Part shown: one piece after another, positions 13,401-40,025 of the stretch
How the letters are laid out: every line of letters begins with the position of its first letter
Numbering within the stretch: the stretch's first letter is position 1
From: Bugula neritina
Lineage: Eukaryota > Animalia > Bryozoa
Length of the DNA stretch: 64,000 bases
NCBI GenBank assembly: GCA_964035545.1
Contig: CAXIUT010000183.1
Coordinates: 1,736,001-1,800,000, forward strand
Reading direction: 5' to 3'
Notes under the pieces: generated by a model
What the model saw: only the letters and a program-made list of their open reading frames with translations
Database searches by the model: none
What the model was told of the DNA's origin: nothing
Made by a program: the position numbers and the translations under genes

Positions 13401-15799
13401 ACTGCAACTCACTGAAATATACTGCAATATACTGAAATACACTGCAACATCCTACAAAATGCTGAAATACACTGTAACATATTGAAAAAAACTGCAACAT
13501 ACTGAAATATACTGCGACACCTAGCAATATACTGTAACATACTGAAATATGCTCTAGCACACTGAAATACAATGCAACTCGCTGAAATATACTGCAATAT
13601 ACTGAAATACACTGCAACATCCTACAAAACGCTGAAATACACTGCAACATATTGAAATACACTGCAACACATTGAAATATACTGCAACATACCGAAATAT
13701 ATGGTAAACTACTGAAATATACTGTAACACATTGAAAAAAACTGCAACATACTGAAATATACTGCGACACCTAGCAATATACTGTAACATACTGAAATAT
13801 GCTCTAGCACACTGAAATACAATGCAACTCACTGAAATATACTGCAACATACTGAAATACACTGCAACATCCTACAACATGCTGAAATACACTGTAACAT
13901 ATTGAAATACACTGCAACACTTTGAAATATACTGCAACATACCGAAATATTTGGTAAACTACTGCAACACACTACAACATATTGAAATACACTGCAACAC
14001 ATTGAAATATACTGCAACATGCCTAAATTTACGGTAATATAATGAAATATACTGTAACACACCGAAATATACTGCAACATACTGAAATACACTGTAACAT
14101 ACTGAAATATACTGCAACATACTGAAATACACTGCTACATACTGAAATACACTGCAACATACTGCAACATACTGAAATACACTGTAACATATTGAAATAA
14201 ACTGCAACATACTACAACATATTGAAATACACTGCAACACATTGAAATATACTGCAACATACCTAAATATACGGTAATATACTGAAATATACTGTAACAC
14301 ATTGAAAAAACTGCAACATACTGAAATACACTGCAACACACTGAAATACACCGCAAAATACTGCAACATACTGAAATACACTGTAACATATTGAAATACA
14401 CTGCAACACATTGAAATATACTGCAACATACCGAAATATATGGTAAACTAATGAAATATACTGTAACACATTGAAAAATACCGCAACATACTGAAATATA
14501 CTGCGACACATTGCAATATACTGTAACATACTGAAATATGCTGTAGCACACTGAAATACACTGCAACACCCTACAACATACTGAAATACACTGTAACATA
14601 TTGAAATACACCGCAAGAAATTGAAATAGACTGCAACACAACAAAATATATGGTAAACTACTGAAATAGACTTTAACACTTTGAAAAATACTGCAACATA
14701 CAGAAATATACTGTAACACACTGAAATATACTGCAACATACTGAAATACACTGTAACATACTGAAATATACTGCAACATACTGAAATACACTGCTACATA
14801 CTGAAATATACTGCAACATACTGCAACATACTGCAACATACCGAAATACGCTGTAACATACTGAAATACACTGCAACACACTACAACATATTGAAATACA
14901 CTGCAACACATTGAAATGTACTGCAACATACCGAAATATACGGTAATATACTGAAATATACAGTAACACATTGAAAAATACTGCAACATACTGAAATACA
15001 CTGCAACACACTGAAACACACCGCAAAAAACTACAACATACTGAAATACACTGTAACATATTGAAGTACACTGCAACACATTTAAATATACTGCAACATA
15101 CCAAAATATATGGTAAACAACTGAAATATACTTTAACACATTGAAAAATACTGCAACATACTGAAATATACTGCGACACATTGCAATATACTGTAACATA
15201 ACGAAATATGCTCTAGCACACTGAAATACACTGCAACTCACTGAAATATACTGCAACATACTGAAATACACTGTGACATACTGAAATATACTGCAACATA
15301 CTGAAATACACTGCTACATACCGAAATATACTGCAACATACTGCAACATACTGAAATTCACTGCAGCATACTACAACATACTGAAATACACTGCAACACA
15401 TTGAAATATACTGCAACATACCTAAATATACGGTAATATACCGAAATATACTGTAACGCATTGCAAAATACTGCAACAAACTGAAATACACTGCGACACA
15501 CTGAAATACGCTGCAAAATACTACAACACACTGAAATAAACTGTAACATATTGAAATACACTGCAACACATTGAAAAATACTGCAACATACTGAAATATA
15601 CTGTAACACACTGAAATATACTGCAACATACTGAAATACACTGTAACATACTGAAATATACTGCAACATACTGAAATACACTGCTACATACTGAAATATA
15701 CTGCAACATACTGCAACATACTGCAATACACTGTAACATACTGAAATACACTGCAACATACTACAACATACTGAAATACACTGCAACATACTGAAATAA

Positions 15800-18700
15800 A
15801 CTGCAACATACTACAACATATTGAAATACACTGCAACACATTGAAATATACTGCAACATACCTAAATATACGGTAATATACTGAAATTCACTGTAACGCA
15901 TTGCAAAATACTGCAACATACTGAAATTCACTGCGACACACTGAAATACGCTGCAAAATACTACAACATACTGAAATAAACTGTAACATATTGAAATACA
16001 CTGCAACACATTGAAAAATACTGCAACATACTGAAATATACTGTAACACACTGAAATATACTGCAACATACTGAAATACACTGTAACATACTGAAATATA
16101 CTGCAACATACTGAAATACACTGCTACATACTGAAATATACTGCAACATACTGCAACATACTGCAATACACTGTAACATACTGAAATACACTGCAACATA
16201 CTACAACATATTGAAATACACTGCAACACATTTAAACACACTGCAACTTACCGAATATATGGTAAACTACTGAAATATACTGTAACGCATTGAAAAGTAC
16301 TGCAACATACTGAAATATATTGCGACACATTGCAATAAACTGTAACATACTGAAAAATGCTGTAGCACACTGAAATGCACTGCCATTCACTGAAATATAC
16401 TGCAACATACTGAAATACACCGCAACATCCTACAACATACTGAAATACACTGTAACATAACGAAACATATGGTAAACTACTGAAATATATTTTAACACAT
16501 TGAAAAATACTGCAACATACTGAAATATATTTTAACACATTGAAAAATACTGCAACATACTGAAATATACTGTAACACACTGAAGTACACTGCAACTCAC
16601 TGAAATATACTGCAATATACTGAAATACACTGCAACATCCTACAAAATGCTGAAATACACTGTAACATATTGAAAAAAACTGCAACATACTGAAATATAC
16701 TGCGACACCTAGCAATATACTGTAACATACTGAAATATGCTCTAGCACACTGAAATACAATGCAACTCACTGAAATATACTGCAATATACTGAAATACAC
16801 TGCAACATCCTACAAAACGCTGAAATACACTGCAACATATTGAAATACACTGCAACACATTGAAATATACTGCAACATACCGAAATATATGGTAAACTAC
16901 TGAAATATACTGTAACACATTGAAAAAAACTGCAACATACTGAAATATACTGCGACACCTAGCAATATACTGTAACATACTGAAATATGCTCTAGCACAC
17001 TGAAATACAATGCAACTCACTGAAATATACTGCAACATACTGAAATACACTGCAACATCCTACAACATGCTGAAATACACTGTAACATATTGAAATACAC
17101 TGCAACACTTTGAAATATACTGCAACATACCGAAATATATGGTAAACTACTGCAACACACTACAACATATTGAAATACACTGCAACACATTGAAATATAC
17201 TGCAACATGCCTAAATTTACGGTAATATAATGAAATATACTGTAACACACCGAAATATACTGCAACATACTGAAATACACTGTAACATACTGAAATATAC
17301 TGCAACATACTGAAATACACTGCTACATACTGAAATACACTGCAACATACTGCAACATACTGAAATACACTGTAACATACTGAAATAAACTGCAACATAC
17401 TACAACATATTGAAATACACTGCAACACATCGAAATATACTGCAACATACCCAAATATACGGTAATATACTGAAATATACTGCAACACATTGAAAAATAC
17501 TGCAACATACTGAAATATAGTGTAACACACCGAAATATACAGCAACATACTGAAATACACTGTAACATACTGAAATATACTGCAACATACTGAAACACAC
17601 TGCTACATACTGAAATATACTGCAACATACTGCAACATACTGCAACATACTGAAATACACTGTAACATACTGAAATAAACTGCAACATACTACAACATAT
17701 TGAAATACACTGCAACACATTGAAATATACTGCAACATACCTAAATATACGGTAATATACTGAAATTCACTGTAACGCATTGCAAAATACTGCAACATAC
17801 TGAAATTCACTGCGACACACTGAAATACGCTGCAAAATACTACAACATACTGAAATAAACTGTAACATATTGAAATACACTGCAACACATTGAAAAATAC
17901 TGCAACATACTGAAATTTACTGTAACACACTGAAATATACTGCAACATACTGAAATACACTGTAACATACTGAAATATACTGCAACATACTGAAATACAC
18001 TGCTACATACTGAAATATACTGCAACATACTGCAACATACTGCAATACACTGTAACATACTGAAATACACTGCAACATACTACAACATATTGAAATACAC
18101 TGCAACACATTTAAACACACTGCAACTTACCGAATATATGGTAAACTACTGAAATATACTGTAACGCATTGAAAAGTACTGCAACATACTGAAATATATT
18201 GCGACACATTGCAATAAACTGTAACATACTGAAAAATGCTGTAGCACACTGAAATGCACTGCCATTCACTGAAATATACTGCAACATACTGAAATACACC
18301 GCAACATCCTACAACATACTGAAATACACTGTAACATAACGAAGCATATGGTAAACTACTGAAATATATTTTAACACATTGAAAAATACTGCAACATACT
18401 GAAATATATTTTAACACATTGAAAAATACTGCATTATACTGAAATATACTGTAACACACTGAAGTACACTGCAACTCACTGAAATATACTGCAATATACT
18501 GAAATACACTGCAACATCCTACAAAATGCTGAAATACACTGTAACATATTGAAAAAAACTGCAACATACTGAAATATACTGCGACACCTAGCAATATACT
18601 GTAACATACTGAAATATGCTCTAGCACACTGAAATACAATGCAACTCACTGAAATATACTGCAATATACTGAAATACACTGCAACATCCTACAAAACGCT

Positions 18701-19300
18701 GAAATACACTGTAACATATTGAAATACACTGCAACACATTGAAATATACTGCAACATACCGAAATATATGGTAAACTACTGAAATATACTGTAACACATT
18801 GAAAAAAACTGCAACATACTGAAATATACTGCGACACCTAGCAATATACTGTAACATACTGAAATATGCTCTAGCACACTGAAATACAATGCAACTCACT
18901 GAAATATACTGCAACATACTGAAATACACTGCAACATCCTACAACATGCTGAAATACACTGTAACATATTGAAATACACTGCAACACTTTGAAATATACT
19001 GCAACATACCGAAATATATGGTAAACTACTGCAACACACTACAACATATTGAAATACACTGCAACACATTGAAATATACTGCAACATGCCTAAATTTACG
19101 GTAATATAATGAAATATACTGTAACACACCGAAATATACTGCAACATACTGAAATACACTGTAACATACTGAAATATACTGCAACATACTGAAATACACT
19201 GCTACATACTCAAATACACTGCAACATACTGCAACATACTGAAATACACTGTAACATACTGAAATAAACTGCAACATACTACAACATATTGAAATACACT
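15800..19300 (+). repeat. Tandem duplication, period 1879 bp; part also present 3188 bp upstream (ends approximate)
   Basis: ORF pairs 16232/18111, 16597/18476 and 17017/18896 (1879), and 13044/16232 and 13829/17017 (3188). The variant CATGCCTAAATTTACGG is shared at ~14018, ~17206 and ~19085. Confidence 0.85.
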
Positions 19301-20566
19301 GCAACACATTGAAATATACTGCAACATACCTAAATATACGGTAATATACTGAAATATACTGTAACACATTGAAAAAACTGCAACATACTGAAATACACTG
19401 CAACACACTGAAATACACCGCAAAATACTACAACATACTGAAATACACTGTAACATATTGAAATACACTGCAACACATTGAAATATACTGCAACATACCG
19501 AAATATATGGTAAACTAATGAAATATACTGTAACACATTGAAAAATACCGCAACATACTGAAATATACTGCGACACATTGCAATATACTGTAACATACTG
19601 AAATATGCTGTAGCACACTGAAATACACTGCAACACCCTACAACATACTGAAATACACTGTAACATATTGAAATACACCGCAAGAAATTGAAATAGACTG
19701 CAACACAACAAAATATATGGTAAACTACTGAAATAGACTTTAACACTTTGAAAAATACTGCAACATACTGCAACATACTGCAACATACCGAAATACGCTG
19801 TAACATACTGAAATACACTGCAACATACTACAACATATTGAAATACACTGCAACACATTGAAATGTACTGCAACATACCGAAATATACGGTAATATACTG
19901 AAATATACAGTAACACATTGAAAAATACTGCAACATACTGAAATACACTGCAACACACTGAAACACACCGCAAAAAACTACAACATACTGAAATACACTG
20001 TAACATATTGAAGTACACTGCAACACATTTAAATATACTGCAACATACCAAAATATATGGTAAACAACTGAAATATACTTTAACACATTGAAAAATACTG
20101 CAACATACTGAAATATACTGCGACACATTGCAATATACTGTAACATAACGAAATATGCTCTAGCACACTGAAATACACTGCAACTCACTGAAATATACTG
20201 CAACATACTGAAATACACTGTGACATACTGAAATATACTGCAACATACTGAAATACACTGCTACATACCGAAATATACTGCAACATACTGCAACATACTG
20301 AAATTCACTGCAGCATACTACAACATACTGAAATACACTGCAACACATTGAAATATACTGCAACATACCTAAATATACGGTAATATACCGAAATATACTG
20401 TAACGCATTGCAAAATACTGCAACAAACTGAAATACACTGCGACACACTGAAATACGCTGCAAAATACTACAACACACTGAAATAAACTGTAACATATTG
20501 AAATACACTGCAACACATTGAAAAATACTGCAACATACTGAAATATACTGTAACACACTGAAATAT

Positions 20567-23500
20567 ACTGCAACATACTGAAATACACTGTAACATACTG
20601 AAATATACTGCAACATACTGAAATACACTGCTACATACTGAAATATACTGCAACATACTGCAACATACTGCAATACACTGTAACATACTGAAATACACTG
20701 CAACATACTACAACATACTGAAATACACTGCAACACATTGAAATATACTGCAACATACCTAAATATACGGTAATATACAGAAATGTACTGTAACATACTG
20801 GAACATACTGTAACACACGGAAATATACTACAAAACACTGAAATACACTGCAACATACTGAAATACGCTGTAACATACTGAAATACACTGCAACATCCTA
20901 CAAAATGCTGAAATACACTGTAACATATTGAAATACACTGCAACACTTTGAAATATACTGCAACATACCGAAATATATGGTAAACTACTGAAATATACTG
21001 TAACACATTGAAAAATACTGCAACATACTGAAATATACTGCGACACCTAGCAATATACTGTAACATACTGAAATATGCTCTAGCACACTGAAATAGAATG
21101 CAACATACTGAAATATACTGCAACATACTGAAATACACTGCAACATCCTACAACATGCTGAAATACACTGTAACATATTGAAATACACTGCAACACTTTG
21201 AAATATACTGCAACATACCGAAATATATGGTAAAATACTGCAACATACTACAACATATTGAAATACACTGCAACACATTGAAATATACTGCAACATACCT
21301 AAATGTACGGTAATATACTGAAATATACTGTAACACATTGAAAAATACTGCAACATACTGAAATACACTGTAACATACTGAAATATACTGCAACATACTG
21401 AAATACTTTGCTACATACTGAAACATACTGCAACATACTGCAACATACTGAAATACACTGTAATATACTGAAATAAACTGCAACATAGTACAACATATTG
21501 AAATACATTGCAACACATTGAAATATACTGCAACATACCTAAATATACGGTAATATACTGAAATATACTGTAACACGTGGAAAAAACTGCAATATACTGA
21601 AATACACTGCAACACACTGAAATATACCGCAAAATACTACAACATACTGAAATACACTGTAACATATTGAAATACACTGCAACACATTGAAATATACTGC
21701 AACATACCGAAATATATGGTAAACTAATGAAATATACTGTAACACATTGAAAAATACCGCAACATACTGAAATATACTGCGACACTTTGCAATATACTGT
21801 AACATACTGAAATATGCTGTAGCACACTGAAATACACTGCAACATCCTACAACATACTGAAATACATTGTAACATATTGAAATACACTGCAACACATTGA
21901 AATATACTGCAACATAACAAAATATATGGTAAACTACTGAAATAGACTTTAACAGATTGAAAAATACTGCAACATACTGAAATATACTGTAACACACTGA
22001 AGTATACTGCAACATACTGAAATACACTGTAACATACTGAAATACTTTGCAACATACTACCACATATTGAAATACGCTGCAACACATTGAAATGTACTGC
22101 AACATACCGAAATATATGGTAAACTACTAAAATATACTGTAACACATTGAAAAATACTGCAACGTACTGAAATATACTGCGACACCTAGCAATATACTGT
22201 AACATACTGAAATATGCTCTAGCACACTGAAATACAATGCAACTTACTGAAATATACTGCAACATACTGAAATACACTGCAACATCCTACAATATGCTAA
22301 AATACACTGTAACATATTGAAATACACTGCAACACTTTGAAATATACTGCAACATACCGAAATATATGGTAAACTACTGCAACATACTACAACATATTGA
22401 AATACACTGCAACACATTGAAATATACTGCAACATACCTAAATATACGGTAATATACTGAAATATACTGTAACACATTGAAAAATACTGCAACATACTGA
22501 AATATACTGTAACACACCGAAATATACAGCAACATACTGAAATACACTGTAACATACTGAAATATACTGCAACACACTGAAACACACTGCTACATACTGA
22601 AATATACTGCAACATACTGCAACATACTGCAACATACTGAATTACACTGTAACATACTGAAATAAACTGCAACATACTACAACATATTGAAATACACTGC
22701 AACACATTGAAATATACTGCAACTTACCTAAATATACGGTAATATACTGAAATTCACTGTAACGCATTGCAAAATACTGCAACATACTGAAATTCACTGC
22801 GACACACTGAAATACGCTGCAAAATACTACAACATACTGAAATAAACTGTAACATATTGAAATACACTGCAACACATTGAAAAATACTGCAACATACTGA
22901 AATATACTGTAACACACTGAAATATACTGCAACATACTGAAATACACTGTAACATACTGAAATATACTGCAACATACTGAAATACACTGCTACATACTGA
23001 AATATACTGCAACATACTGCAATACACTGTAACATACTCAAATACACTGCAACATACTAAAATATATTGAAATACACTGCAACACATTTAAACACACTGC
23101 AACTTACCGAATATATGGTAAACTACTGAAATATACTGTAACGCATTGAAAAGTACTGCAACATACTGAAATATATTGCAACACATTGCAATAAACTGTA
23201 ACATACTGAAAAATGCTGTAGCACACTGAAATACACTGCCATTCACTGAAATATACTGCAACATACTGAAATACACCGCAACATCCTACAACATACTGAA
23301 ATACACTGTAACATAACGAAACATATGGTAAACTACTGAAATATATTTTAACACATTGAAAAATACTGCAACATACTGAAATATATTTTAACACATTGAA
23401 AAATACTGCAACATACTGAAATATACTGTAACACACTGAAGTACACTGCAACTCACTGAAATATACTGCAATATACTGAAGTACACTGCAACATCCTACA

Positions 23501-26500
23501 AAATGCTGAAATACACTGTAACATATTGAAAAAAACTGCAACATACTGAAATATACTGCGACACCTAGCAATATACTGTAACATACTGAAATATGCTCTA
23601 GCACACTGAAATACAATGCAACTCACTGAAACATACTGCAACATACTGAAATACACTGCAACATCCTACAACATGCTGAAATACACTGTAACATATTGAA
23701 ATACACTGCAACACTTTGAAATATACTGCAACATACCGAAATATATGGTAAACTACTGCAACACACTACAACATATTGAAATACACTGCAACACATTGAA
23801 ATATACCGCAACATACCTAAATATACGGTAATATACTGAAATATACTGTAACACACCGAAATATACTGCAACATACTGAAATACACTGTAACATACTGAA
23901 ATATACTGCAACATACTGAAATACACTGCTACATACTGAAATATACTGCAACATACTGCAACATACTGAAATACACTGTAACATACTGAAATAAACTGCA
24001 ACATACTACAACATATTGAAATACACTGCAGCACATTGAAATATACTGCAACATACCTAAATATACGGTAATATACTGAAATATACTGTAACACATTGAA
24101 AAAACTGCAACATACTGAAATACACTGTAACATACTGAAATATACTGCAACATACTGAAATACACTGCTACATACTGAAATATACTGCAACATACTGCAA
24201 CATACTGCAATACACTGTAACATACTGAAATACACTGCAACATACTACAACATACTGAAATACACTGCAACACATTGAAATATACTGCAACATACCTAAA
24301 TATACGGTAATATACAGAAATGTACTGTAACATACTGGAACATACTGTAACACACGGAAATATACTACAAAACACTGAAATACACTGCAACATACTGAAA
24401 TACGCTGTAACATACTGAAATACACTGCAACATCCTACAAAATGCTGAAATACACTGTAACATATTGAAATACACTGCAACACTTTGAAATATACTGCAA
24501 CATACCGAAATATATGGTAAACTACTGAAATATACTGTAACACATTGAAAAATACTGCAACATACTGAAATATACTGCGACACCTAGCAATATACTGTAA
24601 CATACTGAAATATGCTCTAGCACACTGAAATAGAATGCAACATACTGAAATATACTGCAACATACTGAAATACACTGCAACATCCTACAACATGCTGAAA
24701 TACACTGTAACATATTGAAATACACTGCAACACTTTGAAATATACTGCAACATACCGAAATATATGGTAAAATACTGCAACATACTACAACATATTGAAA
24801 TACACTGCAACACATTGAAATATACTGCAACATACCTAAATGTACGGTAATATACTGAAATATACTGTAACACATTGAAAAATACTGCAACATACTGAAA
24901 TACACTGTAACATACTGAAATATACTGCAACATACTGAAATACTTTGCTACATACTGAAACATACTGCAACATACTGCAACATACTGAAATACACTGTAA
25001 TATACTGAAATAAACTGCAACATAGTACAACATATTGAAATACATTGCAACACATTGAAATATACTGCAACATACCTAAATATACGGTAATATACTGAAA
25101 TATACTGTAACACGTGGAAAAAACTGCAATATACTGAAATACACTGCAACACACTGAAATATACCGCAAAATACTACAACATACTGAAGTACACTGTAAC
25201 ATATTGAAATACACTGCAACACATTGAAATATACTGCAACATACCGAAATATATGGTAAACTAATGAAATATACTGTAACACATTGAAAAATACCGCAAC
25301 ATACTGAAATATACTGCGACACTTTGCAATATACTGTAACATACTGAAATATGCTGTAGCACACTGAAATACACTGCAACATCCTACAACATACTGAAAT
25401 ACATTGTAACATATTGAAATACACTGCAACACATTGAAATATACTGCAACATAACAAAATATATGGTAAACTACTGAAATAGACTTTAACAGATTGAAAA
25501 ATACTGCAACATACTGAAATATACTGTAACACACTGAAGTATACTGCAACATACTGAAATACACTGTAACATACTGAAATACTTTGCAACATACTACCAC
25601 ATATTGAAATACGCTGCAACACATTGAAATGTACTGCAACATACCGAAATATATGGTAAACTACTAAAATATACTGTAACACATTGAAAAATACTGCAAC
25701 GTACTGAAATATACTGCGACACCTAGCAATATACTGTAACATACTGAAATATGCTCTAGCACACTGAAATACAATGCAACTTACTGAAATATACTGCAAC
25801 ATACTGAAATACACTGCAACATCCTACAATATGCTAAAATACACTGTAACATATTGAAATACACTGCAACACTTTGAAATATACTGCAACATACCGAAAT
25901 ATATGGTAAACTACTGCAACATACTACAACATATTGAAATACACTGCAACACATTGAAATATACTGCAACATACCTAAATATACGGTAATATACTGAAAT
26001 ATACTGTAACACATTGAAAAATACTGCAACATACTGAAATATACTGTAACACACCGAAATATACAGCAACATACTGAAATACACTGTAACATACTGAAAT
26101 ATACTGCAACACACTGAAACACACTGCTACATACTGAAATATACTGCAACATACTGCAACATACTGCAACATACTGAATTACACTGTAACATACTGAAAT
26201 AAACTGCAACATACTACAACATATTGAAATACACTGCAACACATTGAAATATACTGCAACATACCTAAATATACGGTAATATACTGAAATTCACTGTAAC
26301 GCATTGCAAAATACTGCAACATACTGAAATTCACTGCGACACACTGAAATACGCTGCAAAATACTACAACATACTGAAATAAACTGTAACATATTGAAAT
26401 ACACTGCAACACATTGAAAAATACTGCAACATACTGAAATATACTGTAACACACTGAAATATACTGCAACATACTGAAATACACTGTAACATACTGAAAT

Positions 26501-27664
26501 ATACTGCAACATACTGAAATACACTGCTACATACTGAAATATACTGCAACATACTGCAATACACTGTAACATACTCAAATACACTGCAACATACTACAAT
26601 ATATTGAAATACACTGCAACACATTTAAACACACTGCAACTTACCGAATATATGGTAAACTACTGAAATATACTGTAACGCATTGAAAAGTACTGCAACA
26701 TACTGAAATATATTGCAACACATTGCAATAAACTGTAACATACTGAAAAATGCTGTAGCACACTGAAATACACTGCCATTCACTGAAATATACTGCAACA
26801 TACTGAAATACACCGCAACATCCTACAACATACTGAAATACACTGTAACATAACGAAACATATGGTAAACTACTGAAATATATTTTAACACATTGAAAAA
26901 TACTGCAACATACTGAAATATATTTTAACACATTGAAAAATACTGCAACATACTGAAATATACTGTAACACACTGAAGTACACTGCAACTCACTGAAATA
27001 TACTGCAATATACTGAAGTACACTGCAACATCCTACAAAATGCTGAAATACACTGTAACATATTGAAAAAAACTGCAACATACTGAAATATACTGCGACA
27101 CCTAGCAATATACTGTAACATACTGAAATATGCTCTAGCACACTGAAATACAATGCAACTCACTGAAACATACTGCAACATACTGAAATACACTGCAACA
27201 TCCTACAACATGCTGAAATACACTGTAACATATTGAAATACACTGCAACACTTTGAAATATACTGCAACATACCGAAATATATGGTAAACTACTGCAACA
27301 CACTACAACATATTGAAATACACTGCAACACATTGAAATATACTGCAACATACCTAAATATACGGTAATATACTGAAATATACTGTAACACACCGAAATA
27401 TACTGCAACATACTGAAATACACTGTAACATACTGAAATATACTGCAACATACTGAAATACACTGCTACATACTGAAATATACTGCAACATACTGCAACA
27501 TACTGAAATACACTGTAACATACTGAAATAAACTGCAACATACTACAACATATTGAAATACACTGCAGCACATTGAAATATACTGCAACATACCTAAATA
27601 TACGGTAATATACTGAAATATACTGTAACACATTGAAAAAACTGCAACATACTGAAATACACTG
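20567..27664 (+). repeat. Tandem duplication, period 3537 bp (two near-identical copies)
   Basis: Private variants occur at offset 3537: AAATAGAATG 21091/24628, AAATACTTTGCTAC 21401/24938, AACAGATTGA 21951/25488, GCAGCACATTG 24028/27565. ORF pairs 20631/24168, 21411/24948 and 23753/27290 agree. Confidence 0.95.
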
Positions 27665-28777
27665 CAACACACTGAAATACACCGCAAAATACTACAACAT
27701 ACTGAAATACACTGTATCATATTGAAATCCAGTGCAACACATTGAAATATACTGCAACATACCGAAATAAATGGTAAACTAATGAAATATACTGTAACAC
27801 ATTGAAAAATACCGCAACATACTGAAATATACTGCGACACATTGCAATATACTGTAACATACTGAAATATGCTGTAGCACACTGAAATACACTGCAACAC
27901 CCTACAACATACTGAAATACACTGTAACATATTGAAATACACCGCAAGAAATTGAAATAGACTGCAACACAACAAAATATATGGTAAACTACTGAAATAG
28001 ACTTTAACACTTTGAAAAATACTGCAACATACAGAAATATACTGTAACACACTGAAATATACTGCAACATACTGAAATACACTGTAACATACTGAAATAT
28101 ACTGCAACATACCTAAATATACGGTAATATACCGAAATATACTGTAACGCATTGCAAAATACTGCAACAAACTGAAATACACTGCGACACACTGAAATAC
28201 GCTGCAAAATACTACAACACACTGAAATAAACTGTAACATATTGAAATACACTGCAACACATTGAAAAATACTGCAACATACTGAAATATACTGCGACAC
28301 CTAGCAATATACTGTAACATACTGAAATATGCTCTAGCACACTGAAATACAATGCAACTCACTGAAATATACTGCAACATACTGAAATACACTGCAACAT
28401 CCTACAACATGCTGAAATACACTGTAACATATTGAAATACACTGCAACACATTGAAATATACTGCAACATACCTAAATATATGGTAAACTACTGCAACAC
28501 ACTACAACATATTGAAATACACTGCAACACATTGAAATATACTGCAACATACCTAAATATACGGTAATGTACTGAAATATACTGTAACACACCGAAATAT
28601 ATTGCAACATACTGAAATACGCTGTAACATACTGAAATACACTGCAACATACTACAACATATTGAAATACACTGCAACACATTGAAATGTACTGCAACAT
28701 ACCGAAATATACGGTAATATACTGAAATATACAGTAACACATTGAAAAATACTGCAACATACTGAAATACACTGCAA

Positions 28778-28800
28778 CACAGGATAGTTAAGGGCATCCT
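28778..28800 (+). repeat. Left terminal inverted repeat CACAGGATAGTTAAGGGCATCCT
   Basis: Reverse complement of 29511-29533. The first 19 bp match perfectly, 22/23 overall. Confidence 0.97.
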
Positions 28801-29174
28801 CACTAAGAATATTATAAATTTCTCTCAAAATGTAGTTCAGGTTCTTGAATAATATTGCTCTGCGGGTGGCATGCGTGTTGCCTACTTGTAATTGTTTAGC
28901 CTGAGATCAAACTACAACCAATAAGCAGCAACCTTCGTTAGGGCTGCGAAATCTATCAACATTCCATTATGGGTGCTACATAAACAAAGTACAAAGAGAG
29001 CTATTCATTATAGCCTGCCAGCTAGCTAGCCTGTAATTATTATGTAGGCGCCAATATCTTCTCATCCCTACGTGCTCAGTGAAGTGTGAAGTGCTGCGCG
29101 CTGCTAGTTTCTTATGAGAAAATATGGCATTTTCAGTGTATAAATCACCAATTTATGAGCAATCTAGCAGAGTT

Positions 29175-29462
29175 ATTGAAAAAAGAAAAAAACTTACACT
29201 GGAGAAATATCTCAGGATTCCAGCAGTGCAATTTTTATTCAGATATCAAGCTTTGCTGCTGAGATATTTTACTGGTACTGAAAAGTCAGCTTTTCAGGCA
29301 AAATTGGCCAAAATTCGGCAGTTTTTTGTCTATAACTTCGCAAAAAAAATGAAAATTGAAATTTCCAAAAAACTTACACTGGAGAAAAAGAAGATCTACA
29401 ACATAGTTTTTAAATTTTGACTCTAGCACAATTAGGTGAGATTTTATTTTACTGGTACTGAA
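29175..29462 (+). repeat. Degenerate 180-bp-period internal direct duplication within the MITE
   Basis: AAAAAACTTACACTGGAGAAA at 29187 and 29367, TATTTTACTGGTACTGAA at 29265 and 29445, and ATTGAAA at 29175 and 29355 are all offset by exactly 180 bp. Confidence 0.88.
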
Positions 29463-29510
29463 TTCTTATATGATTACAATGCAAACCTCAGCAAGGCAGT
29501 TGCAGCTAAA

Positions 29511-29533
29511 AGGTTGCCCTTAACTATCCTGTG
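29511..29533 (-). repeat. Right terminal inverted repeat (AGGTTGCCCTTAACTATCCTGTG on + strand)
   Basis: Reads CACAGGATAGTTAAGGGCAACCT on the minus strand. Confidence 0.97.
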
Positions 29534-32500
29534 AACACACTGAAACACACCGCAAAAAACTACAACATACTGAAATACACTGTAACATATTGAAGTACAC
29601 TGCAACACATTTAAATATTTTGCAACATACCAAAATATATGGTAAACAACTGAAATATACTTTAACACATTGAAAAATACTGCAACATACTGAAATATAC
29701 TGCGACACATTGCAATATACTGTAACATAACGAAATATGCTCTAGCACACTGAAATACACTGCAACTCACTGAAATATACTGCAACATACTGAAATACAC
29801 TGTGACATACTGAAATATACTGCAACATACTGAAATACACTGCTACATACCGAAATATACTGCAACATACTGCAACATACTGAAATACACTGCAGCATAC
29901 TACAACATACTGGAATACACTGCAACACATTGAAATATACTGCAACATACCTAAATATACGGTAATATACCGAAATATACTGTAACGCATTGCAAAATAC
30001 TGCAACAAACTGAAATACACTGCGACACACTGAAATACGCTGCAAAATACTACAACACACTGAAATAAACTGTAACATATTGAAATACACTGCAACACAT
30101 TGAAAAATACTGCAACATACTGAAATATACTGCGACACCTAGCAATATACTGTAACATACTGAAATATGCTCTAGCACACTGAAATACAATGCAACTCAC
30201 TGAAATATACTGCAACATACTGAAATACACTGCAACACATTGAAATATACTGCAACATACCTAAATATATGGTAAACTACTGCAACACACTACAACATAT
30301 TGAAATACACTGCAACACATTGAAATATACTGCAACATACCTAAATATACGGTAATATACTGAAATATACTGTAACACACCGAAATATACTGCAACATAC
30401 TGAAATACACTGTAACATACTGAAATATACTGCAACATACTGAAATACACTGCTACATACTGAAATACACTGCAACATACTGCAACATACTGAAATACAC
30501 TGTAACATACTGAAATAAACTGCAACATACTACAACATATTGAAATACACTGCAACACATTGAAATATACTGCAACATACCTAAATATACGGTAATATAC
30601 TGAAATATACTGTAACACATTGAAAAAACTGCAACATACTGAAATACACTGCAACACACTGAAATACACCGCAAAATACTACAACATACTGAAATACACT
30701 GTAACATATTGAAATCCAGTGCAACACATTGATATATACTGCAACATACCGAAATATATGGTAAACTAATGAAATATACTGTAACACATTGAAAAATACC
30801 GCAACATACTGAAATATACTGCGACACATTGCAATATACTGTAACATACTGAAATATGCTGTAGCACACTGAAATACACTGCAACACCCTACAACATACT
30901 GAAATACACTGTAACATATTGAAATACACCGCAAGAAATTGAAATAGACTGCAACACAACAAAATATATGGTAAACTACTGAAATAGACTTTAACACTTT
31001 GAAAAATACTGCAACATACAGAAATATACTGTAACACACTGAAATATACTGCAACATACTGAAATACACTGTAACATACTGAAATATACTGCAACATACT
31101 GAAATACACTGCTACATACTGAAATATACTGCAACATACTGCAACATACTGCAACATACCGAAATACGCTGTAACATACTGAAATACACTGCAACATACT
31201 ACAACATATTGAAATACACTGCAACACATTGAAATGTACTGCAACATACCGAAATATACGGTAATATACTGAAATATACAGTAACACATTGAAAAATACT
31301 GCAACATACTGAAATACACTGCAACACACTGAAACACACCGCAAAAAACTACAACATACTGAAATACACTGTAACATATTGAAGTACACTGCAACACATT
31401 TAAATATACTGCAACATACCAAAATATATGGTAAACAACTGAAATATACTTTAACACATTGAAAAATACTGCAACATACTGAAATATACTGCGACACATT
31501 GCAATATACTGTAACATAACGAAATATGCTCTAGCACACTGAAATACACTGCAACTCACTGAAATATACTGCAACATACTGAAATACACTGTGACATACC
31601 GAAATATACTGCAACATACTGCAACATACTGAAATTCACTGCAGCATACTACAACATACTGAAATACACTGCAACACATTGAAATACACTGCAACTTACC
31701 GAATATATGGTAAACTACTGAAATATACTGTAACGCATTGAAAAGTACTGCAACATACTGAAATATATTGCGACACATTGCAATAAACTGTAACATACCT
31801 AAATATACGGTAATATACTGAAATTCACTGTAACGCATTGCAAAATACTGCAACATACTGAAATTCACTGCGACACACTGAAATACGCTGCAAAATACTA
31901 CAACATACTGAAATAAACTGTAACATATTGAAATACACTGCAACACATTGAAAAATACTGCAACATACTGAAATATACTGTAACACACTGAAATATACTG
32001 CAACATACTGAAATACACTGTAACATACTGAAATATACTGCAACATACTGAAATACACTGCTACATACTGAAATATACTGCAACATATTGCAACATACTG
32101 CAATACACTGTAACATACTGAAATACACTGCAACATACTACAACATATTGAAATACACTGCAACACATTGAAATACACTGCAACTTACCGAATATATGGT
32201 AAACTACTGAAATATACTGTAACGCATTGAAAAGTACTGCAACATACTGAAATATATTGCGACACATTGCAATAAACTGTAACATACTGAAAAATGCTCT
32301 AGCACACTGAAATACACTGCCATTCACTGAAATATACTGCAACATACTGAAATACACCGCAACATCATACAACATACTGAAATACACTGTAACATAACGA
32401 AACATATGGTAAACTACTGAAATATATTTTAACACATTGAAAAATACTGCAACATACTGAAATGTATTTTAACACATTGAAAAATACTGCAACATACTGA

Positions 32501-33156
32501 AATATACTGCGACACATTGCAATATACTGTAACATAACGAAATATGCTCTAGCACACTGAAATACACTGCAACTCACTGAAATATACTGCAACATACTGA
32601 AATACACTGTGACATACTGAAATATACTGCAACATACTGAAATACACTGCTACATACTGAAATATACTGCAACATACTGCAACATACTGAAATACACTGC
32701 AGCATACTACAACATACTGGAATACACTGCAACACATTGAAATATACTGCAACATACCTAAATATACGGTAATATACCAAAATATACTGTAACGCATTGC
32801 AAAATACTGCAACAAACTGAAATACACTGCGACACACTGAAATACGCTGCAAAATACTACAACACACTGAAATAAACTGTAACATATTGAAATACACTGC
32901 AACACATTGAAAAATACTGCAACATACTGAAATATACTGTAACGCACTGAAATATACTGCAACATACTGAAATACACTGTAACATACTGAAATATACTGC
33001 AACATACTGAAATACACTGCTACATACTGAAATATACTGCAACATAGTGCAACATACTGCAATACACTGTAACATACTGAAATACACTGCAACATACTAC
33101 AACATGTTGAAATACACTGCAAAACATTGAAATACACTGCAACTTACCGAATATAT

Positions 33157-34166
33157 GGTAAACTACTGAAATATACTGTAACGCATTGAAAAGTACTGCA
33201 ACATACTGAAATACATTGCGACACATTGCAATAAACTGTAACATACTGAAAAATGCTGTAGCACACTGAAATACACTGCCATTCACTGAAATATACTGCA
33301 ACATAATGAAATACACCGCAACATCCTACAACATACTGAAATACACTGTAACATATTGAAATACACTGCAACACATTGAAATATACTGCAACATAACGAA
33401 ATATATGGTAAACTACTGAAATATATTTTAACACATTGAAAAATACTGCAACATACTGAAATATATTTCAACACATTGAAAAATACTGCAACATACTGAA
33501 ATATACCGTAACACACTGAAATACACTGCAACTCACTGAAATAGACTGCAATATACTGAAATACACTGCAACATCCTACAAAATGCTGAAATACACTGTA
33601 ACATATTGAAATACACTGCAACACATTGAAATATACTGCAACATACCGAAATATATGGTAAACTACTGAAATATACTGTGACACATTGAAAAAAACTGCA
33701 ACATACTGAAATATACTGCGACACCTAGCAATATACTGTAACATACTGAAATATGCTCTAGCACACTGAAATACAATGCAACTCACTGAAATATACTGCA
33801 ACATACTGAAATACACAGCAACATCCTACAACATGCTGAAATACACTGTAACATATTGAAATACACTGCAACACATTGAAATATACTGCAACATACCGAA
33901 ATATATGGTAAACTACTGAAATATACTGTAACACACTGAAAAATACTGCAACGTACTGAAATATACTGCGACACCTAGCAATATACTGTAACATACTGAA
34001 ATATGCTCTAGCGCACTGAAATACAATGCAACTTACTGAAATATACTGCAACATACTGAAATACACTGCAACATCCTACAATATGCTGAAATACACTGTA
34101 ACATATTGAAATACACTGCAACACTTTGAAATATACTGCAACATACCGAAATATATGGTAAACTAC
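33157..34166 (+). repeat. 250-bp higher-order repeat run (paralog of 651-1660)
   Basis: GGTAAACTAC at 33157, 33407, 33657, 33907 and 34157. Confidence 0.9.
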
Positions 34167-34169
34167 TGC

Positions 34170-34810
34170 AACATACTACAACATATTGAAATACACTGCA
34201 ACACATTGAAATATACTGCAACATACCTAAATATACGGTAATATACTGAAATATACTGTAACACATTGAAAAATACTGCAACATACTGAAATATACTGTA
34301 ACACACCGAAATATACAGCAACATACTGAAATACACTGTAACATACTGAAATATACTGCAACATACTGAAACACACTGCTACATAATGAAATATACTGCA
34401 ATATACTGCAACATACTGAAATACACTGTAACATACTGAAATAAACTGCAACATACTACAACATATTGAAATACACTGCAACACATTGAAATATACTGCA
34501 ACATACCTAAATATACGGTAATATACTGAAATATACTGTAACACATTGAAAAATACTGCAACATACTGAAATATACTGTAACACACCGAAATATACAGCA
34601 ACATACTGAAATACACTGTAACATACTGAAATATACTGCAACATACTGAAACACACTGCTACATAATGAAATATACTGCAATATACTGCAACATACTGAA
34701 ATACACTGTAACATACTGAAATAAACTGCAACATACTACAACATATTGAAATACACTGCAACACATTGAAATATACTGCAACATACCTAAATATACGGTA
34801 ATATACTGAA
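34170..34810 (+). repeat. 280-bp tandem duplication
   Basis: GCTACATAATGAA variant at 34378 and 34658. ORF pairs 34227/34507 and 34379/34659. Confidence 0.88.
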
Positions 34811-37800
34811 ATTCACTGTAACGCATTGCAAAATACTGCAACATACTGAAATTCACTGCGACACACTGAAATACGCTGCAAAATACTACAACATACTGAA
34901 ATAAACTGTAACATTTTGAAATACACTGCAACACATTGAAAAATACTGCAACATACTGAAATATACTGTAACACACTGAAATATACTGCAACATACTGAA
35001 ATACACTGTAACATACTGAAATATACTGCAACATACTGAAATACACTGCTACATACTGAAATATACTGCAACATACTGCAACATACTGCAATACACTGTG
35101 ACATACTGAAATACACTGCAACATACTACAACATATTGAAATACACTGCAACACATTGAAATACACTGCAACTTACCGAATATATGGTAAACTACTGAAA
35201 TATACTGTAACGCATTGAAAAGTACTGCAACATACTGAAATATATTGCGACACATTGCAATAAACTGTAACATACTGAAAAATGCTGTAGCACACTGAAA
35301 TACACTGCCATTCACTGAAATATACTGCAACTTACTGAAATACACCGCAACATCATACAACATACTGAAATACACTGTAACATAACGAAACATATGGTAA
35401 ACTACTGAAATATATTTTAACACATTGAAAAATACTGCAACATACTGAAATGTATTTTAACACATTGAAAAATACTGCAACATACTGAAATATACTGTAA
35501 CACACTGAAGTACACTGCAACTCACTGAAATATACTGCAATATACTGAAATACACTGCAACATCCTACAAAATGCTGAAATACACTGTAACATATTGAAA
35601 TACACTGCAACACATTGAAATATACTGCAACATACCGAAATATATGGTAAACTACTGAAATATACTGTAACACATTGAAAAAAACTTCAACATACTTAAA
35701 TATACTGCGACACCTAGCAATATACTGCAACATACTAAAATACACTGTCACATACTGAAATATACTGCAACATACTGAAATACACTGCTACATACTGAAA
35801 TATACTGCAACATACTGCAACATACTGAAATACACTGTAACATACTGAAATAAACTGCAACATACTACAACATATTGAAATACACTGCAACACATTGAAA
35901 TATACTGCAACATACCTAAATATACGGTAATATACTGAAATATACTGTAACACATTGAAAAATACCGCAACATACTGAAATATACTGCGACACATTGCAA
36001 TATACCGTAACATACTGAAATATGCTGTAGCACACTGAAATACACTGCAACACCCTACAACATACTGAAATACACTGTAACATATTGAAATACACCGCAA
36101 GAAATTGAAATAGACTGCAACACAACAAGATATATGGTAAACTACTGAAATAGATTTTAACACATTGAAAAATACTGCAACATACAGAAATATACTGTAA
36201 CACACTGAAATATACTGCAACATACTGAAATACACTGTAACATACTGAAATATACTACAACATACTGAAATACACTGCTACATACTGAAATATACTGCAA
36301 CATACTGCAACATACTGCAACATACTGAAATACGCTGTAACATACTGAAATACACTGCAACATACTACAACATATTGAAATACACTGCAACACATTGAAA
36401 TGTACTGCAACATACCGAAATATACGGTAATATACTGAAATACACAGTAACACAATGAAAAATACTGCAACATACCGAAAAACACTGCAACACACTGAAA
36501 CACACCGCAAAAAACTACAACATACTGAAATACACTGTAACATATTGAAGTACACTGCAACACATTTAAATATACTGCAACATACCAAAATATATGGTAA
36601 ACAACTGAAACATACTTTAACACATTGAAAAATACTGCAACATACTGAAATATACTGCGACACATTGCAATATACTGTAACATAACGAAATATGCTCTAG
36701 CACACTGAAATACACTGCAACTCACTGAAATATACTGCAACATACTGAAATACACTGTGACATACTGAAATATACTGCAACATACTGAAATACACTGCTA
36801 CATACCGAAATATACTGCAACATACTGCAACATACTGAAATACACTGCAGCATACTACAACATACTGAAATACACTGCAACACATTGAATTATACTGCAA
36901 CATACCTAAATATACGGTAATATACTGAAATTCACTGTAACGCATTGCAAAATACTGCAACATACTGAAATTCACTGCGACACACTGAAATACGCTGCAA
37001 AATACTACAACATACTGAAATAAACTGTAACATATTGAAATACACTGCAACACATTGAAAAATACTGCAACATACTGAAATATACTGTAACACACTGAAA
37101 TATACTGCAACATACTGAAATACACTGTAACATACTGAAATATACTGCAACATACTGAAATACACTGCTACATACTGAAATATACTGCAACATACTGCAA
37201 CATACTGCAATACACTGTGACATACTGAAATACACTGCAACATACTACAACATATTGAAATACACTGCAACACATTGAAATACACTGCAACTTACCGAAT
37301 ATATGGTAAACTACTGAAATATACTGTAACGCATTGAAAAGTACTGCAACATACTGAAATATATTGCGACACATTGCAATAAACTGTAACATACTGAAAA
37401 ATGCTGTAGCACACTGAAATACACTGCCATTCACTGAAATATACTGCAACTTACTGAAATACACCGCAACATCATACAACATACTGAAATACACTGTAAC
37501 ATAACGAAACATATGGTAAACTACTGAAATATATTTTAACACATTGAAAAATACTGCAACATACTGAAATGTATTTTAACACATTGAAAAATACTGCAAC
37601 ATACTGAAATATACTGTAACACACTGAAGTACACTGCAACTCACTGAAATATACTGCAATATACTGAAATACACTGCAACATCCTACAAAATGCTGAAAT
37701 ACACTGTAACATATTGAAATACACTGCAACACATTGAAATATACTGCAACATACCGAAATATATGGTAAACTACTGAAATATACTGTAACACATTGAAAA

Positions 37801-37860
37801 AAACTTCAACATACTTAAATATACTGCGACACCTAGCAATATACTGCAACATACTGAAAT
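34780..37860 (+). repeat. Partial duplication at offset 2119 bp (ends approximate)
   Basis: ORF pairs 34813/36932, 35049/37168 and 35353/37472. The private variant AAAACTTCAACATACTTAAA occurs at ~35681 and ~37800. Confidence 0.85.
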
Positions 37861-40025
37861 ACACTGTAACATACTGAAATATACTGCAACATACTGAAAT
37901 ACACTGCTACATACTGAAATATACTGCAACATACTGCAACATACTGAAATACGCTGTAACATACTGAAATACACTGCAACATACTACAACATATTGAAAT
38001 ACACTGCAACACATTGAAATGTACTGCAACATACCAAAATATACGGTAATATACTGAAATACACAGTAACACAATGAAAAATACTGCAACATACCGAAAA
38101 ACACTGCAACACACTGAAACACACCGCAAAAAACTACAACATACTGAAATACACTGTAACATATTGAAGTACACTGCAACACATTTAAATATACTGCAAC
38201 ATACCAAAATATATGGTAAACAACTGAAACATACTTTAACACATTGAAAAATACTGCAACATACTGAAATATACTGCGACACATTGCAATATACTGTAAC
38301 ATAACGAAATATGCTCTAGCACACTGAAATACACTGCAACTCACTGAAATATACTGCAACATACTGAAATACACTGTGACATACTGAAATATACTGCAAC
38401 ATACTGAATTACACTGCTACATACCGAAATATACTGCAACATACTGCAACATACTGAAATACACTGCAGCATACTACAACATACTGAAATACACTGCAAC
38501 ACATTGAAATATACTGCAACATACCAAATATACGGTAATATACCGAAATATACTGTAACGCATTGCAAAATACTGCAACAAACTGAAATACACTGCGACA
38601 CACTGAAATACGCTGCAAAATACTACAACACACTGAAATAAACTGTAACATATTGAAATACACTGCAACACATTGAAAAATACTGCAACATACTGAAATA
38701 TACTGTAACACACTGAAATATACTGCAACATACTGAAATACACTGTAACATACTGAAATATACTGCAACATACTGAAATACACTGCTACATACTGAAATA
38801 TACTGCAACATACTGCAACATACTGCAATACACTGTAACATACTGAAATACACTGAAACATACTACAACATATTGAAATACACTGCAAAACATTGAAATA
38901 CACTGCAACTTACCGAATATATGGTAAACTACTGAAATATACTGTAACGCATTGAAAAGTACTGCAACATACTGAAATATATTGCGACACATTGCAATAA
39001 ACTGTAACATACTAAAAAATGCTGTAGCACACTGAAATACACTGCCATTCACTGAAATATACTGCAACATACTGAAATACACCGCAACATCCTACAACAT
39101 ACTGAAATACACTGTAACATATTGAAATACACTGCAACACATTGAAATATACTGCAACATAACGAAATATATGGTAAACTACTGAAATATTTTTTAACAC
39201 ATTGAAAAATACTGCAACATACTGAAATATATTTTAACACATTGAAAAATACTGCAACATACTGAAATATACCGTAACACACTGAAGTACACTGCAACTC
39301 ACTGAAATATACTGCAATATACTGAAATACACTGCAACATCCTACAAAATGCTGAAATACACTGTAACATATTGAAATACACTGCAACACATTGAAATAA
39401 ACTGCAACATACCGAAATATATGGTAAACTACTGAAATATACTGTGACACATTGAAAAAAACTGCAACATACTGAAATATACTGCGACACCTAGCAATAT
39501 ACTGTAACATACTGAAATATGCTCTAGCACACTGAAATACAATGCAACTCACTGAAATATACTGCAACATACTGAAATACACAGCAACATCCTACAACAT
39601 GCTGAAATACACTGTAACATATTGAAATACACTGCAACACATTGAAATATACTGCAACATACCGAAATATATGGTAAACTACTGAAATATACTGTAACAC
39701 ATTGAAAAATACTGCAACGTACTGAAATATACTGCGACACCTTGCAATATACTGTAACATACTGAAATATGCTCTAGCGCACTGAAATGCAATGCAACTT
39801 ACTGAAAAATACTGCAACATACTGAAATACACTGCAACATCCTACAATATGCTGAAATACACTGTAACATATTGAAATACACTGCAACACTTTGAAATAT
39901 ACTGCAACATACCGAAATATATGGTAAACTACTGCAACATACTACAACATATTGAAATACACTGCAACACATTGAAATATACTGCAACATACCTAAATAT
40001 ACGGTAATATACTGAAATATACTGT

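What the first reader, a model, noticed from the sequence alone, without database searches (positions are those of the whole stretch)
28778..29533. Solitary intact 756-bp CAC...GTG TIR element with 2-bp TSD inserted in a satellite array
Seen: 23-bp TIRs (one mismatch), an AA duplication resolved by comparison with empty paralogous sites in the same window, and a unique AT-rich interior without a transposase. Established: CAC termini with a 2-3-bp TSD characterise CMC (CACTA/EnSpm, Mirage, Chapaev) elements, and 2-bp TSDs are typical of animal EnSpm and Mirage families. Inference: this is a recently mobile non-autonomous family, possibly undescribed, which implies an autonomous partner elsewhere in the genome.
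Basis: partly seen in the sequence, partly recalled or inferred. Interest (0 to 1): 0.75.

Follow-up and report, generated by a model that had tools for sequence, protein, structure and literature searches.

The report
Small hitch-hiking jumping gene in satellite
This is one copy of a 756-base jumping-gene remnant that has no enzyme of its own, is present in at least 300 near-identical copies in this invertebrate genome, and borrows the cutting enzyme of a few 11-kb relatives; it is a real and young but ordinary kind of element.

Summary
Window 28778-29533 is a 756-bp insert with 23-nt inverted ends (one mismatch), CAC...GTG tips and an AA duplication. It is the only non-satellite DNA in the 64-kb window.

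Removing exactly 2 bp recreates a 118-nt sequence found three times, without mismatch, elsewhere in the window.

It is solitary only within the window:
- The genome holds 316 + 312 matching ends, and all 40 scored matches are full-length at 98-100% identity.
- 27 of 29 independent insertions carry an exact 2-bp duplication, mostly A/T-rich and not TA-specific.

The predicted autonomous partner exists. Elements of 11-12.8 kb have the same ends and 2-bp duplications, and about six copies carry an intact transposase exon. The multi-exon gene shows D, D, E plus the CxC, LH and H(4)H motifs that define CMC transposases.

Homologues are unnamed proteins of marine invertebrates with no Pfam family. 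A predicted structure of one homologue matches RAG1 (Z 16) and Transib (Z 14) best.

So this is a non-autonomous member of the CMC/"CMCT" clade, but not of the plant-type Transposase_21 family.

This scan had already found the same transposon system on other DNA of this genome (s1-453677, s1-475745). Interest is low to moderate.

The parts
28778..29533 (+). 756-bp non-autonomous TIR transposon. Its orientation matches that of the transposase gene in the 11-kb partner.
   Evidence: It is the only non-satellite stretch in the window.
28778..28800 (+). Left terminal inverted repeat, starting CACAGGATAGTTAAGGGCA. The first 24 nt are identical to the left end of the 11-kb element.
29511..29533 (-). 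Right terminal inverted repeat. The last 25 nt are identical to the right end of the 11-kb element.
28776..28777 (.). Left copy of the 2-bp target-site duplication (AA)
29534..29535 (.). Right copy of the 2-bp target-site duplication (AA)
28778..28932 (+). Left subterminal region, about 72% identical to the left end of the 11-kb autonomous element
29057..29533 (+). Right 477 bp, about 92% identical to the right end of the 11-kb autonomous element. This marks the element as a deletion derivative.
29175..29462 (+). Internal partial tandem duplication. Two pairs of direct repeats (33 nt and 18 nt) each lie 180 bp apart.
29124..29420 (+). 98-aa ORF, judged not to be a gene. Against the 11-kb element it shows 15 non-synonymous and 4 synonymous codon changes, and its ATG reads ATA there.
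1..28775 (.). Host 20-bp satellite array on the left. It contains exact paralogous empty sites at 14947 and 19894.
29536..64000 (.). Host 20-bp satellite array on the right. It contains an exact paralogous empty site at 31265.

Best explanation
The element is one copy of a young, high-copy, non-autonomous cut-and-paste DNA transposon. It is a short internal-deletion derivative that keeps only the ends of an 11-kb autonomous element.

It makes no enzyme. It is most likely moved in trans by the multi-exon DDE transposase of the roughly six intact 11-kb copies elsewhere in the genome. That enzyme belongs to the CMC/'CMCT' clade (EnSpm-Mirage-Chapaev-Transib) and has a RAG1/Transib-like fold.

The enzyme would bind the 19-23-nt inverted ends, cut at the CAC tips and join the ends to target DNA with a 2-nt stagger. 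Repair of that stagger gives the 2-bp duplication.

This copy landed in a 20-bp satellite. It was later copied passively, together with the surrounding array segment, to give a twin 33.8 kb away.

Shown: the ends, the duplication length, the empty sites, the copy number, the youth of the family, the shared ends with the long elements, the catalytic motifs, and the fold of a homologue.

Inferred: mobilisation in trans by this particular enzyme, and the cutting chemistry (hairpin on the flanking DNA, as in RAG and Transib).
For: Ends and duplication:
- TIR and AA duplication.
- Three exact 118-nt empty sites appear only when 2 bp are removed.
- A second, independent gapless empty site exists for copy L007.
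- 27 of 29 independent insertions have an exact 2-bp duplication: TA 8, TT 5, AA 4, CA 3, AT 2, others 5.

Copy number and age:
- 316 + 312 end matches with at most 1 mismatch, against 0 for the reversed control.
- All 40 scored matches are full-length at 98-100%.
- Mean divergence from the majority sequence is 0.8%.

Partner elements:
- Elements of 11.0-12.8 kb have identical ends and AT, AA and TA duplications. The right 477 bp of the small element is 92% identical to their right end, and its left 155 bp is 72% identical to their left end.
- Their exons carry WHDHS (D1), GDSPA (D2), CMCG, EPLHD, FHCLSVH and AEHAER.
- Five copies of one exon are 100% identical at the protein level and one is 98%.

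The protein family:
- 453 homologues at E <= 0.001, from scallop, amphioxus, acorn worm, mussels, oysters and a sea anemone.
- In the family alignment the H(4)H pair and both E are invariant; D1, D2 and the CxC pair are conserved in the long members that cover that region.
- AlphaFold2 model of homologue P0050: pLDDT 82.4. D440 lies on strand 1 and D541 just after strand 4 of the RNase-H-like fold.
- Foldseek ranks 1-49 are all RAG1, BbRAGL or HzTransib, with best E 2.6e-8.
- VIA-align gives RAG1 Z 16.1 over 431 residues, HzTransib Z 13.8 and the P element Z 10.4.
- The literature definition of the CMC/CMCT motifs, ends and 2-5 bp duplications fits.
Against: - No transposition was observed. 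Trans-mobilisation rests on identical ends and equal duplication length only.
- The left subterminal region is only 72% identical to the 11-kb element. The small element therefore does not descend from the present master copies, and a different, possibly lost, autonomous relative may have founded it.
- There is no sequence-level match to Transposase_21, Plavaka, DUF1258 or RAG1 models or to RAG1/Transib chains in the PDB. The placement within the clade rests on short motifs and on fold.
- No CMC structure appeared among the solved-structure matches, and I know of none, so the fold match cannot separate CMC from Transib.
- The fold was predicted for a homologue about 28-30% identical to the bryozoan exons (tblastn), not for the bryozoan protein itself.
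- In the bryozoan copy the cysteine pair is C-x-C rather than C-x2-C.
Confidence: 0.85

Rival explanations
1. It is a Stowaway-like miniature element of the Tc1/mariner/pogo group, which duplicates TA on insertion.
For: TA is the commonest duplication, at 8 of 27. The element is short and AT-rich.
Against: 19 of the 27 duplications are not TA, including CA, GT, AG and GA. The long elements with the same ends encode a RAG1-fold enzyme with CxC and H(4)H motifs. Tc1/mariner structures match only a 48-residue helix-turn-helix stretch at Z 5.1.
Confidence: 0.02
2. It belongs to the PIF/Harbinger-ISL2EU (PHIS) group, some members of which make 2-bp duplications.
For: The literature reports 0-, 2- or 3-bp duplications among elements related to Harbinger.
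Against: No DDE_Tnp_4 domain appears in the exons or in the 78 family members. The single weak hit is in a chimeric gene model. The partner's motifs and fold are CMCT-type.
Confidence: 0.02
3. It is a true Transib/RAG-like family member that has shifted from 5-bp to 2-bp duplications, rather than a CMC lineage.
For: RAG1, BbRAGL and HzTransib are the best structural matches. The end CACAGGA shares 5 of 7 bases with the RSS heptamer CACAGTG (for the end; the heptamer is from general knowledge). A 2026 preprint reports Transib relatives with 3-bp and TA duplications. ESM features place RAG1 clusters at 0.90.
Against: Profile and single-sequence searches find no RAG1 or Transib chain in the PDB even at E <= 10. 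The Pfam RAG1 model does not match. Structure-based identity is only 11-13%. Transposase_21 and Plavaka clusters score about the same as RAG1 in the ESM features.
Confidence: 0.2
4. It is dead DNA. The family is no longer mobile, and its uniformity comes from segmental duplication and gene conversion rather than from recent transposition.
For: This very copy has a twin made by duplication of the satellite, with identical flanks.
Against: 28 other copies have unrelated flanks, each with its own 2-bp duplication, on at least 11 contigs. Copies with an intact transposase exon exist.
Confidence: 0.08

Closest known systems
CMC superfamily (CACTA/EnSpm, Mirage, Chapaev), within the wider 'CMCT clade' of Kojima 2025 (PMC12730594)
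   Same: CAC...GTG termini. A short duplication, 2 bp as reported for Mirage and animal EnSpm. [quoted passage not shown] Abundant non-autonomous derivatives.
   Different: No match to Pfam Transposase_21, DUF4218 or Plavaka. The cysteine spacing varies from C(1)C to C(3)C. There is only one CxxC pair in the N-terminal part and no cysteine-rich 'Chapa' finger. Many members carry a SAP domain inside the catalytic region. The sub-lineage was not determined.
Transib transposons, RAG1 and ProtoRAG (BbRAGL)
   Same: The best structural match covers about 430 residues of the catalytic core (Z 13-16). The zinc-binding C...C / H...H arrangement is the same, as is the E-x2-E at the third catalytic position. 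The ends begin with CAC.
   Different: The duplication is 2 bp, not 5 bp. There is no sequence-level similarity detectable by HMMER. No heptamer-spacer-nonamer architecture was shown, and no RAG2-like partner was looked for.
Miniature and short non-autonomous TIR elements such as Hopper/Kodama of Drosophila Transib (preprint 10.64898/2026.08.26.747230)
   Same: A short deletion derivative far outnumbers a few long autonomous masters and shares only their ends.
   Different: At 756 bp it is longer than classic MITEs. Its left subterminal region has diverged from that of the current masters (72% identity).

Membership tests
CMC / CMCT clade | 5'-CAC...GTG-3' (CA..TG) termini | tested here: met
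   seen in all 30 copies and in the long elements. The definition comes from PMC4079192 and PMC12730594.
CMC / CMCT clade | Target-site duplication of 2-5 bp (2 bp for Mirage and animal EnSpm) | tested here: met
   27 of 29 independent loci have an exact 2-bp duplication. Empty sites confirm it.
CMC / CMCT clade | [quoted passage not shown] | tested here: met
   Seen in the exons of the 11-kb partner and in the family alignments. The cysteine spacing is 1-3 rather than strictly 2.
CMC / CMCT clade | Phylogenetic placement among curated EnSpm, Mirage, Chapaev and Transib transposases | not testable with these tools
   Repbase, Dfam and RepeatPeps sequences are not on hand.
CACTA/EnSpm proper (Pfam Transposase_21, PF02992) | Match to the Transposase_21 / DUF4218 models | tested here: not met
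   No hit in the exons, in 10 long homologues or in the 78 family members at E <= 1. The whole-genome scan was silent, but so was its control.
Chapaev | 3-4 bp duplication (TWA in Chapaev3) and an N-terminal cysteine-rich 'Chapa' zinc finger | tested here: not met
   The duplication is 2 bp and not TWA. The N-terminal regions hold few cysteines, typically one CxxC pair. The Chapa domain itself could not be modelled, so that half of the test is weak.
Transib / RAG1 | 5-bp duplication | tested here: not met
Transib / RAG1 | Sequence similarity to the RAG1 core or to HzTransib | tested here: not met
   PF12940 gives no hit. PDB phmmer and profile searches find no RAG1 or Transib chain at E <= 10.
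Transib / RAG1 | RAG1-type catalytic core fold | tested here: met
   Foldseek ranks 1-49, best E 2.6e-8. VIA-align gives Z 16.1 over 431 residues. The model is of homologue P0050, not of the bryozoan protein.
Non-autonomous (MITE-like) element | No transposase of its own, ends shared with an autonomous element, many uniform copies | tested here: met
Tc1/mariner-Stowaway | TA-specific duplication | tested here: not met
   TA in 8 of 27
PHIS / ISL2EU | DDE_Tnp_4-type transposase | tested here: not met

The most novel reading that the evidence does not exclude
The enzyme that moves this element may belong to a deep branch of the CMCT clade that is still unnamed. That branch is confined to marine invertebrates and is structurally closer to RAG1 than any solved transposase except Transib, yet it makes 2-bp rather than 5-bp staggers. 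With about six intact masters and at least 300 uniform 756-bp substrates, this genome would be a natural system for asking how RAG-type enzymes set end recognition and stagger length.
Probability: 0.3. Interest if true: 0.5.

Novelty: new member of a known kind. Interest (0 to 1): 0.3.

Why it matters
On its own the element is a routine repeat annotation for a bryozoan genome.

Its value is as a clean, well-supported example. Exact empty sites fix the duplication at 2 bp. It also points to an active-looking transposon family whose enzyme links the CACTA/Mirage/Chapaev group with Transib and RAG1.

That family has no Pfam model and no named member in the protein databases searched. A curated description would improve repeat annotation of mollusc, cnidarian, amphioxus and bryozoan genomes.

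The copy in the satellite, with its duplicated twin, also gives a dated marker for how fast this satellite array is rearranged.

Tried and rejected
- Rfam on the element: no match, so it is not a tRNA- or RNA-derived repeat.
- Pfam on ten exon ORFs of the 11-kb element: only noise.
- Whole-genome scans with PF12940 and PF02992: silent, but the controls were silent too, so they carry no information. PF26100 is not in the local library.
- PDB sequence searches with the exon and with the family profile: only a weak SAP-domain match.
- Pfam on chimeric gene models that carry DUF7869, SWIM or THAP labels: these domains lie outside the transposase part.
- A 98-aa ORF inside the element was considered as a possible gene and rejected.
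- A longer duplication, such as the 5-nt AACAC repeat that overlaps the CAC tip, was considered and rejected by the empty-site test.
- The Yuan and Wessler 2011 paper could not be read. Its criteria are quoted second-hand from PMC4079192 and PMC12730594.
- The spliced transposase was not joined into one protein. Exons were searched one by one by reference, so neither a full-length bryozoan protein nor its fold was examined.
- Nothing in the window looked human.

Full report
**What is at the coordinates**

Window 28778-29533 is a 756-bp insert. Its ends, 28778-28800 and 29511-29533, are 23-nt inverted repeats with one mismatch. They are the only inverted pair in 28600-29700. The first 19 nt are perfect and begin with CAC.

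The whole 64-kb window is otherwise a 20-bp (two 10-bp halves) AT-rich satellite of uniform composition. A k-mer scan shows the insert to be the only non-satellite stretch. AA flanks the insert on both sides.

**Duplication length**

I joined the 60-nt flanks and removed 0-7 bases at the junction. Only removal of exactly 2 gives a 118-mer that recurs with zero mismatches, at window 14947, 19894 and 31265. Every other length gives at least 25 mismatches.

A 400-nt reconstructed empty site matches seven paralogous places with 9-16 mismatches. The alternative 5-nt AACAC repeat that overlaps the CAC tip is excluded.

**The element is not solitary in the genome**

The window is contig C192:1736001-1800000 of a 216-Mb, 321-contig assembly. 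Earlier notes of this scan take the assembly to be a bryozoan with a ciliate contaminant; I did not check that.

- The 756 bp gives 40 scored matches, all full-length at 98-100%, out of 765 first-look candidates.
- The 19-nt end occurs 316 times forward and 312 times reverse with at most one mismatch. The reversed control occurs 0 times.
- Among the first 100 listed ends I counted by hand, about 37 pairs spaced 723-759 bp, three pairs of 11.0-12.8 kb, two of intermediate size, and about 18 ends whose partner is missing or more diverged.

In the 30 fetched loci the ends are identical. Of 29 independent insertions, 27 have an exact 2-bp duplication and none has a longer one: TA 8, TT 5, AA 4, CA 3, AT 2, and one each of GT, AC, TG, AG and GA. 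The target is A/T-rich but not TA-specific.

Copy L007 lies inside another repeat family. A paralogue of that repeat (L041) aligns without a gap only if 2 bp are removed.

Copies differ from the majority sequence by 0.8% on average. The window copy differs at 10 sites.

**The twin copy**

L002 (C192:1731002) has the same flanks as the window copy and shares 9 of its 10 private differences. It is therefore the same insertion, copied with the surrounding satellite to a place 33,776 bp away.

Since that duplication the two copies have gained 5 differences inside the element but only 1 in 2.2 kb of ungapped flank. I could not explain this (note 3).

**The autonomous partner**

Three long elements carry the same ends and their own 2-bp duplications (AT, AA, TA):
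- C1:13964138-13975164, 11,027 bp
- C2:24996230-25007188
- C3:1146574-1159371

This is shown.

The right 477 bp of the small element is 92% identical to their right end. Its left 155 bp is 72% identical to their left end. The terminal 24-25 nt are identical. The small element is thus a deletion derivative of this lineage, though not of the present master copies.

The long element has a multi-exon gene on the same strand. Open stretches carry these motifs:
- WHDHS
- FFSGDSPARQLEAGQQ
- FPCMCG
- EPLHD
- PFHCLSVHLPE...VAEHAER

Homologous proteins map by tblastn to exons at 1765-2418, 2778-2981, 4749-5015, 5267-5500, 6306-7061, 7394-7654 and 7948-8094. The CxC exon aligns to the family profile with E 3.9e-5.

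The exon holding H(4)H and E occurs five times at 100% and once at 98% protein identity. About ten further, decayed relatives exist.

They were searched one by one by reference.

**Which family the enzyme belongs to**

Sequence searches:
- Pfam finds nothing in the exons, in ten long homologues or in 78 family members at E <= 1. The only recurrent hit is a SAP domain, in 16 members.
- An exhaustive HMMER search with the 153-aa exon finds 453 proteins at E <= 0.001.
- The named hits are uncharacterised proteins of a scallop, amphioxus and an acorn worm. A profile search adds mussels, oysters, a pearl oyster and a sea anemone; none of these has a relevant Pfam label.
- The H(4)H pair and both E are invariant in the family alignment. 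D1, D2, the CxC pair and the LH histidine are conserved in the long members that cover them.

Published definitions:
- PMC4079192 gives C(2)C, LH and H(4)H, with CAC...GTG ends, as the hallmarks of Chapaev/CMC.
[quoted passage not shown] - PMC4411706 places Chapaev inside a broad Transib superfamily.

Structure:
- An AlphaFold2 model of homologue P0050, built with the 78-sequence alignment, has pLDDT 82.4 and pTM 0.73. The core is above 90.
- D440 lies on the first strand and D541 just after the fourth strand of the RNase-H-like fold.
- Foldseek ranks 1-49 are all RAG1, amphioxus BbRAGL or HzTransib, with best E 2.6e-8. The next family is the P element at 3.4e-2.
- VIA-align gives RAG1 Z 16.1 (431 residues, rmsd 5.1), HzTransib 13.8, BbRAGL 12.9, P element 10.4, ISCth4 8.7 and Hermes 6.7.
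- At sequence level there is no detectable similarity to RAG1 or Transib chains.
- Protein-language-model features put the core equally near RAG1, Transposase_21 and Plavaka clusters, at 0.87-0.90. These are leads only.
- The N-terminal parts have few cysteines, unlike the complex 'Chapa' finger described for Chapaev and RAG1.

**Reading**

The element is a non-autonomous member of a CMC/CMCT-type transposon family. Its sub-lineage is not EnSpm as Pfam defines it. It is not Transib or RAG1 by sequence, and it is not Chapaev3 by duplication type. Whether it is Mirage-like or unnamed cannot be decided without Repbase or Dfam.

The mechanism is inferred from the family. The transposase binds the inverted ends, cleaves at the CAC tips and integrates with a 2-nt stagger. 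A hairpin on the flanking DNA, as in RAG and Transib, is plausible but untested.

A 2026 preprint shows that duplication length varies even within Transib relatives. Duplication length alone therefore cannot decide the sub-lineage.

**The interior**

There is no Rfam match. A partial 180-bp tandem duplication is present. A 98-aa ORF is intact in 27 of 30 copies. Against the 11-kb element, however, it shows 15 non-synonymous and 4 synonymous codon changes, and its ATG reads ATA there, so it is not a gene.

**Earlier notes of this scan**

The same system was already reported on other DNA of this genome. The 11-kb element is s1-453677 and a 5.4-kb gene-less relative in satellite DNA is s1-475745.

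My tests were run independently and agree with both. They add that the enzyme meets the published CMC motif definition, so 'RAG1-fold' and 'CMC' are two views of one placement.

**Verdict**

The element is a new member of a known kind, of low to moderate interest.

Noticed in passing
window 28778-29533 versus L002 (G000:C192:1731002-1731757): The window copy and its twin, made by segmental duplication, differ at 5 sites within the 756-bp element but at only 1 site in 2,204 bp of ungapped flanking satellite. Either the insert mutates faster, or the satellite flanks are being homogenised.
   Followed up: partly
window 1-64000; exact paralogous sites at 14947, 19894 and 31265: The whole window is a 20-bp satellite with irregular higher-order structure. 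118-nt stretches recur exactly, and 400-nt stretches recur with 9-16 mismatches at seven positions.
   Followed up: partly
L035+L036 (G000:C3:1146574-1159371), about 9846-10484 of the joined element: The 12.8-kb autonomous-type element carries a nested, diverged relative of the 756-bp element (72-84% identity). This points to an older sister family of short elements.
   Followed up: no
L007 / L039-L041 (G000:C119:32852-33452 and paralogues on C5, C3, C2, C8, C6): One copy of the element is inserted in a different repeat family that has at least six copies at 97-99% identity. That family was not identified.
   Followed up: no
Family alignment A2; for example P0206 residues 248-277: 16 of 78 homologues of the transposase carry a SAP DNA-binding domain inserted between the second catalytic D and the LH motif.
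   Followed up: partly
G000: C6:7091386, C2:20954679, C3:12191851, C4:15509091, C5:6919437 and others: About ten older, stop-containing relatives of the transposase exon (34-83% identity) show that the lineage has been in this genome for a long time.
   Followed up: no
L015, L016, L022, L028 (C192:249054, C239:713809, C192:263788, C1:15524529): At least four further, independent insertions of the same element lie in the same type of 10/20-bp satellite.
   Followed up: no
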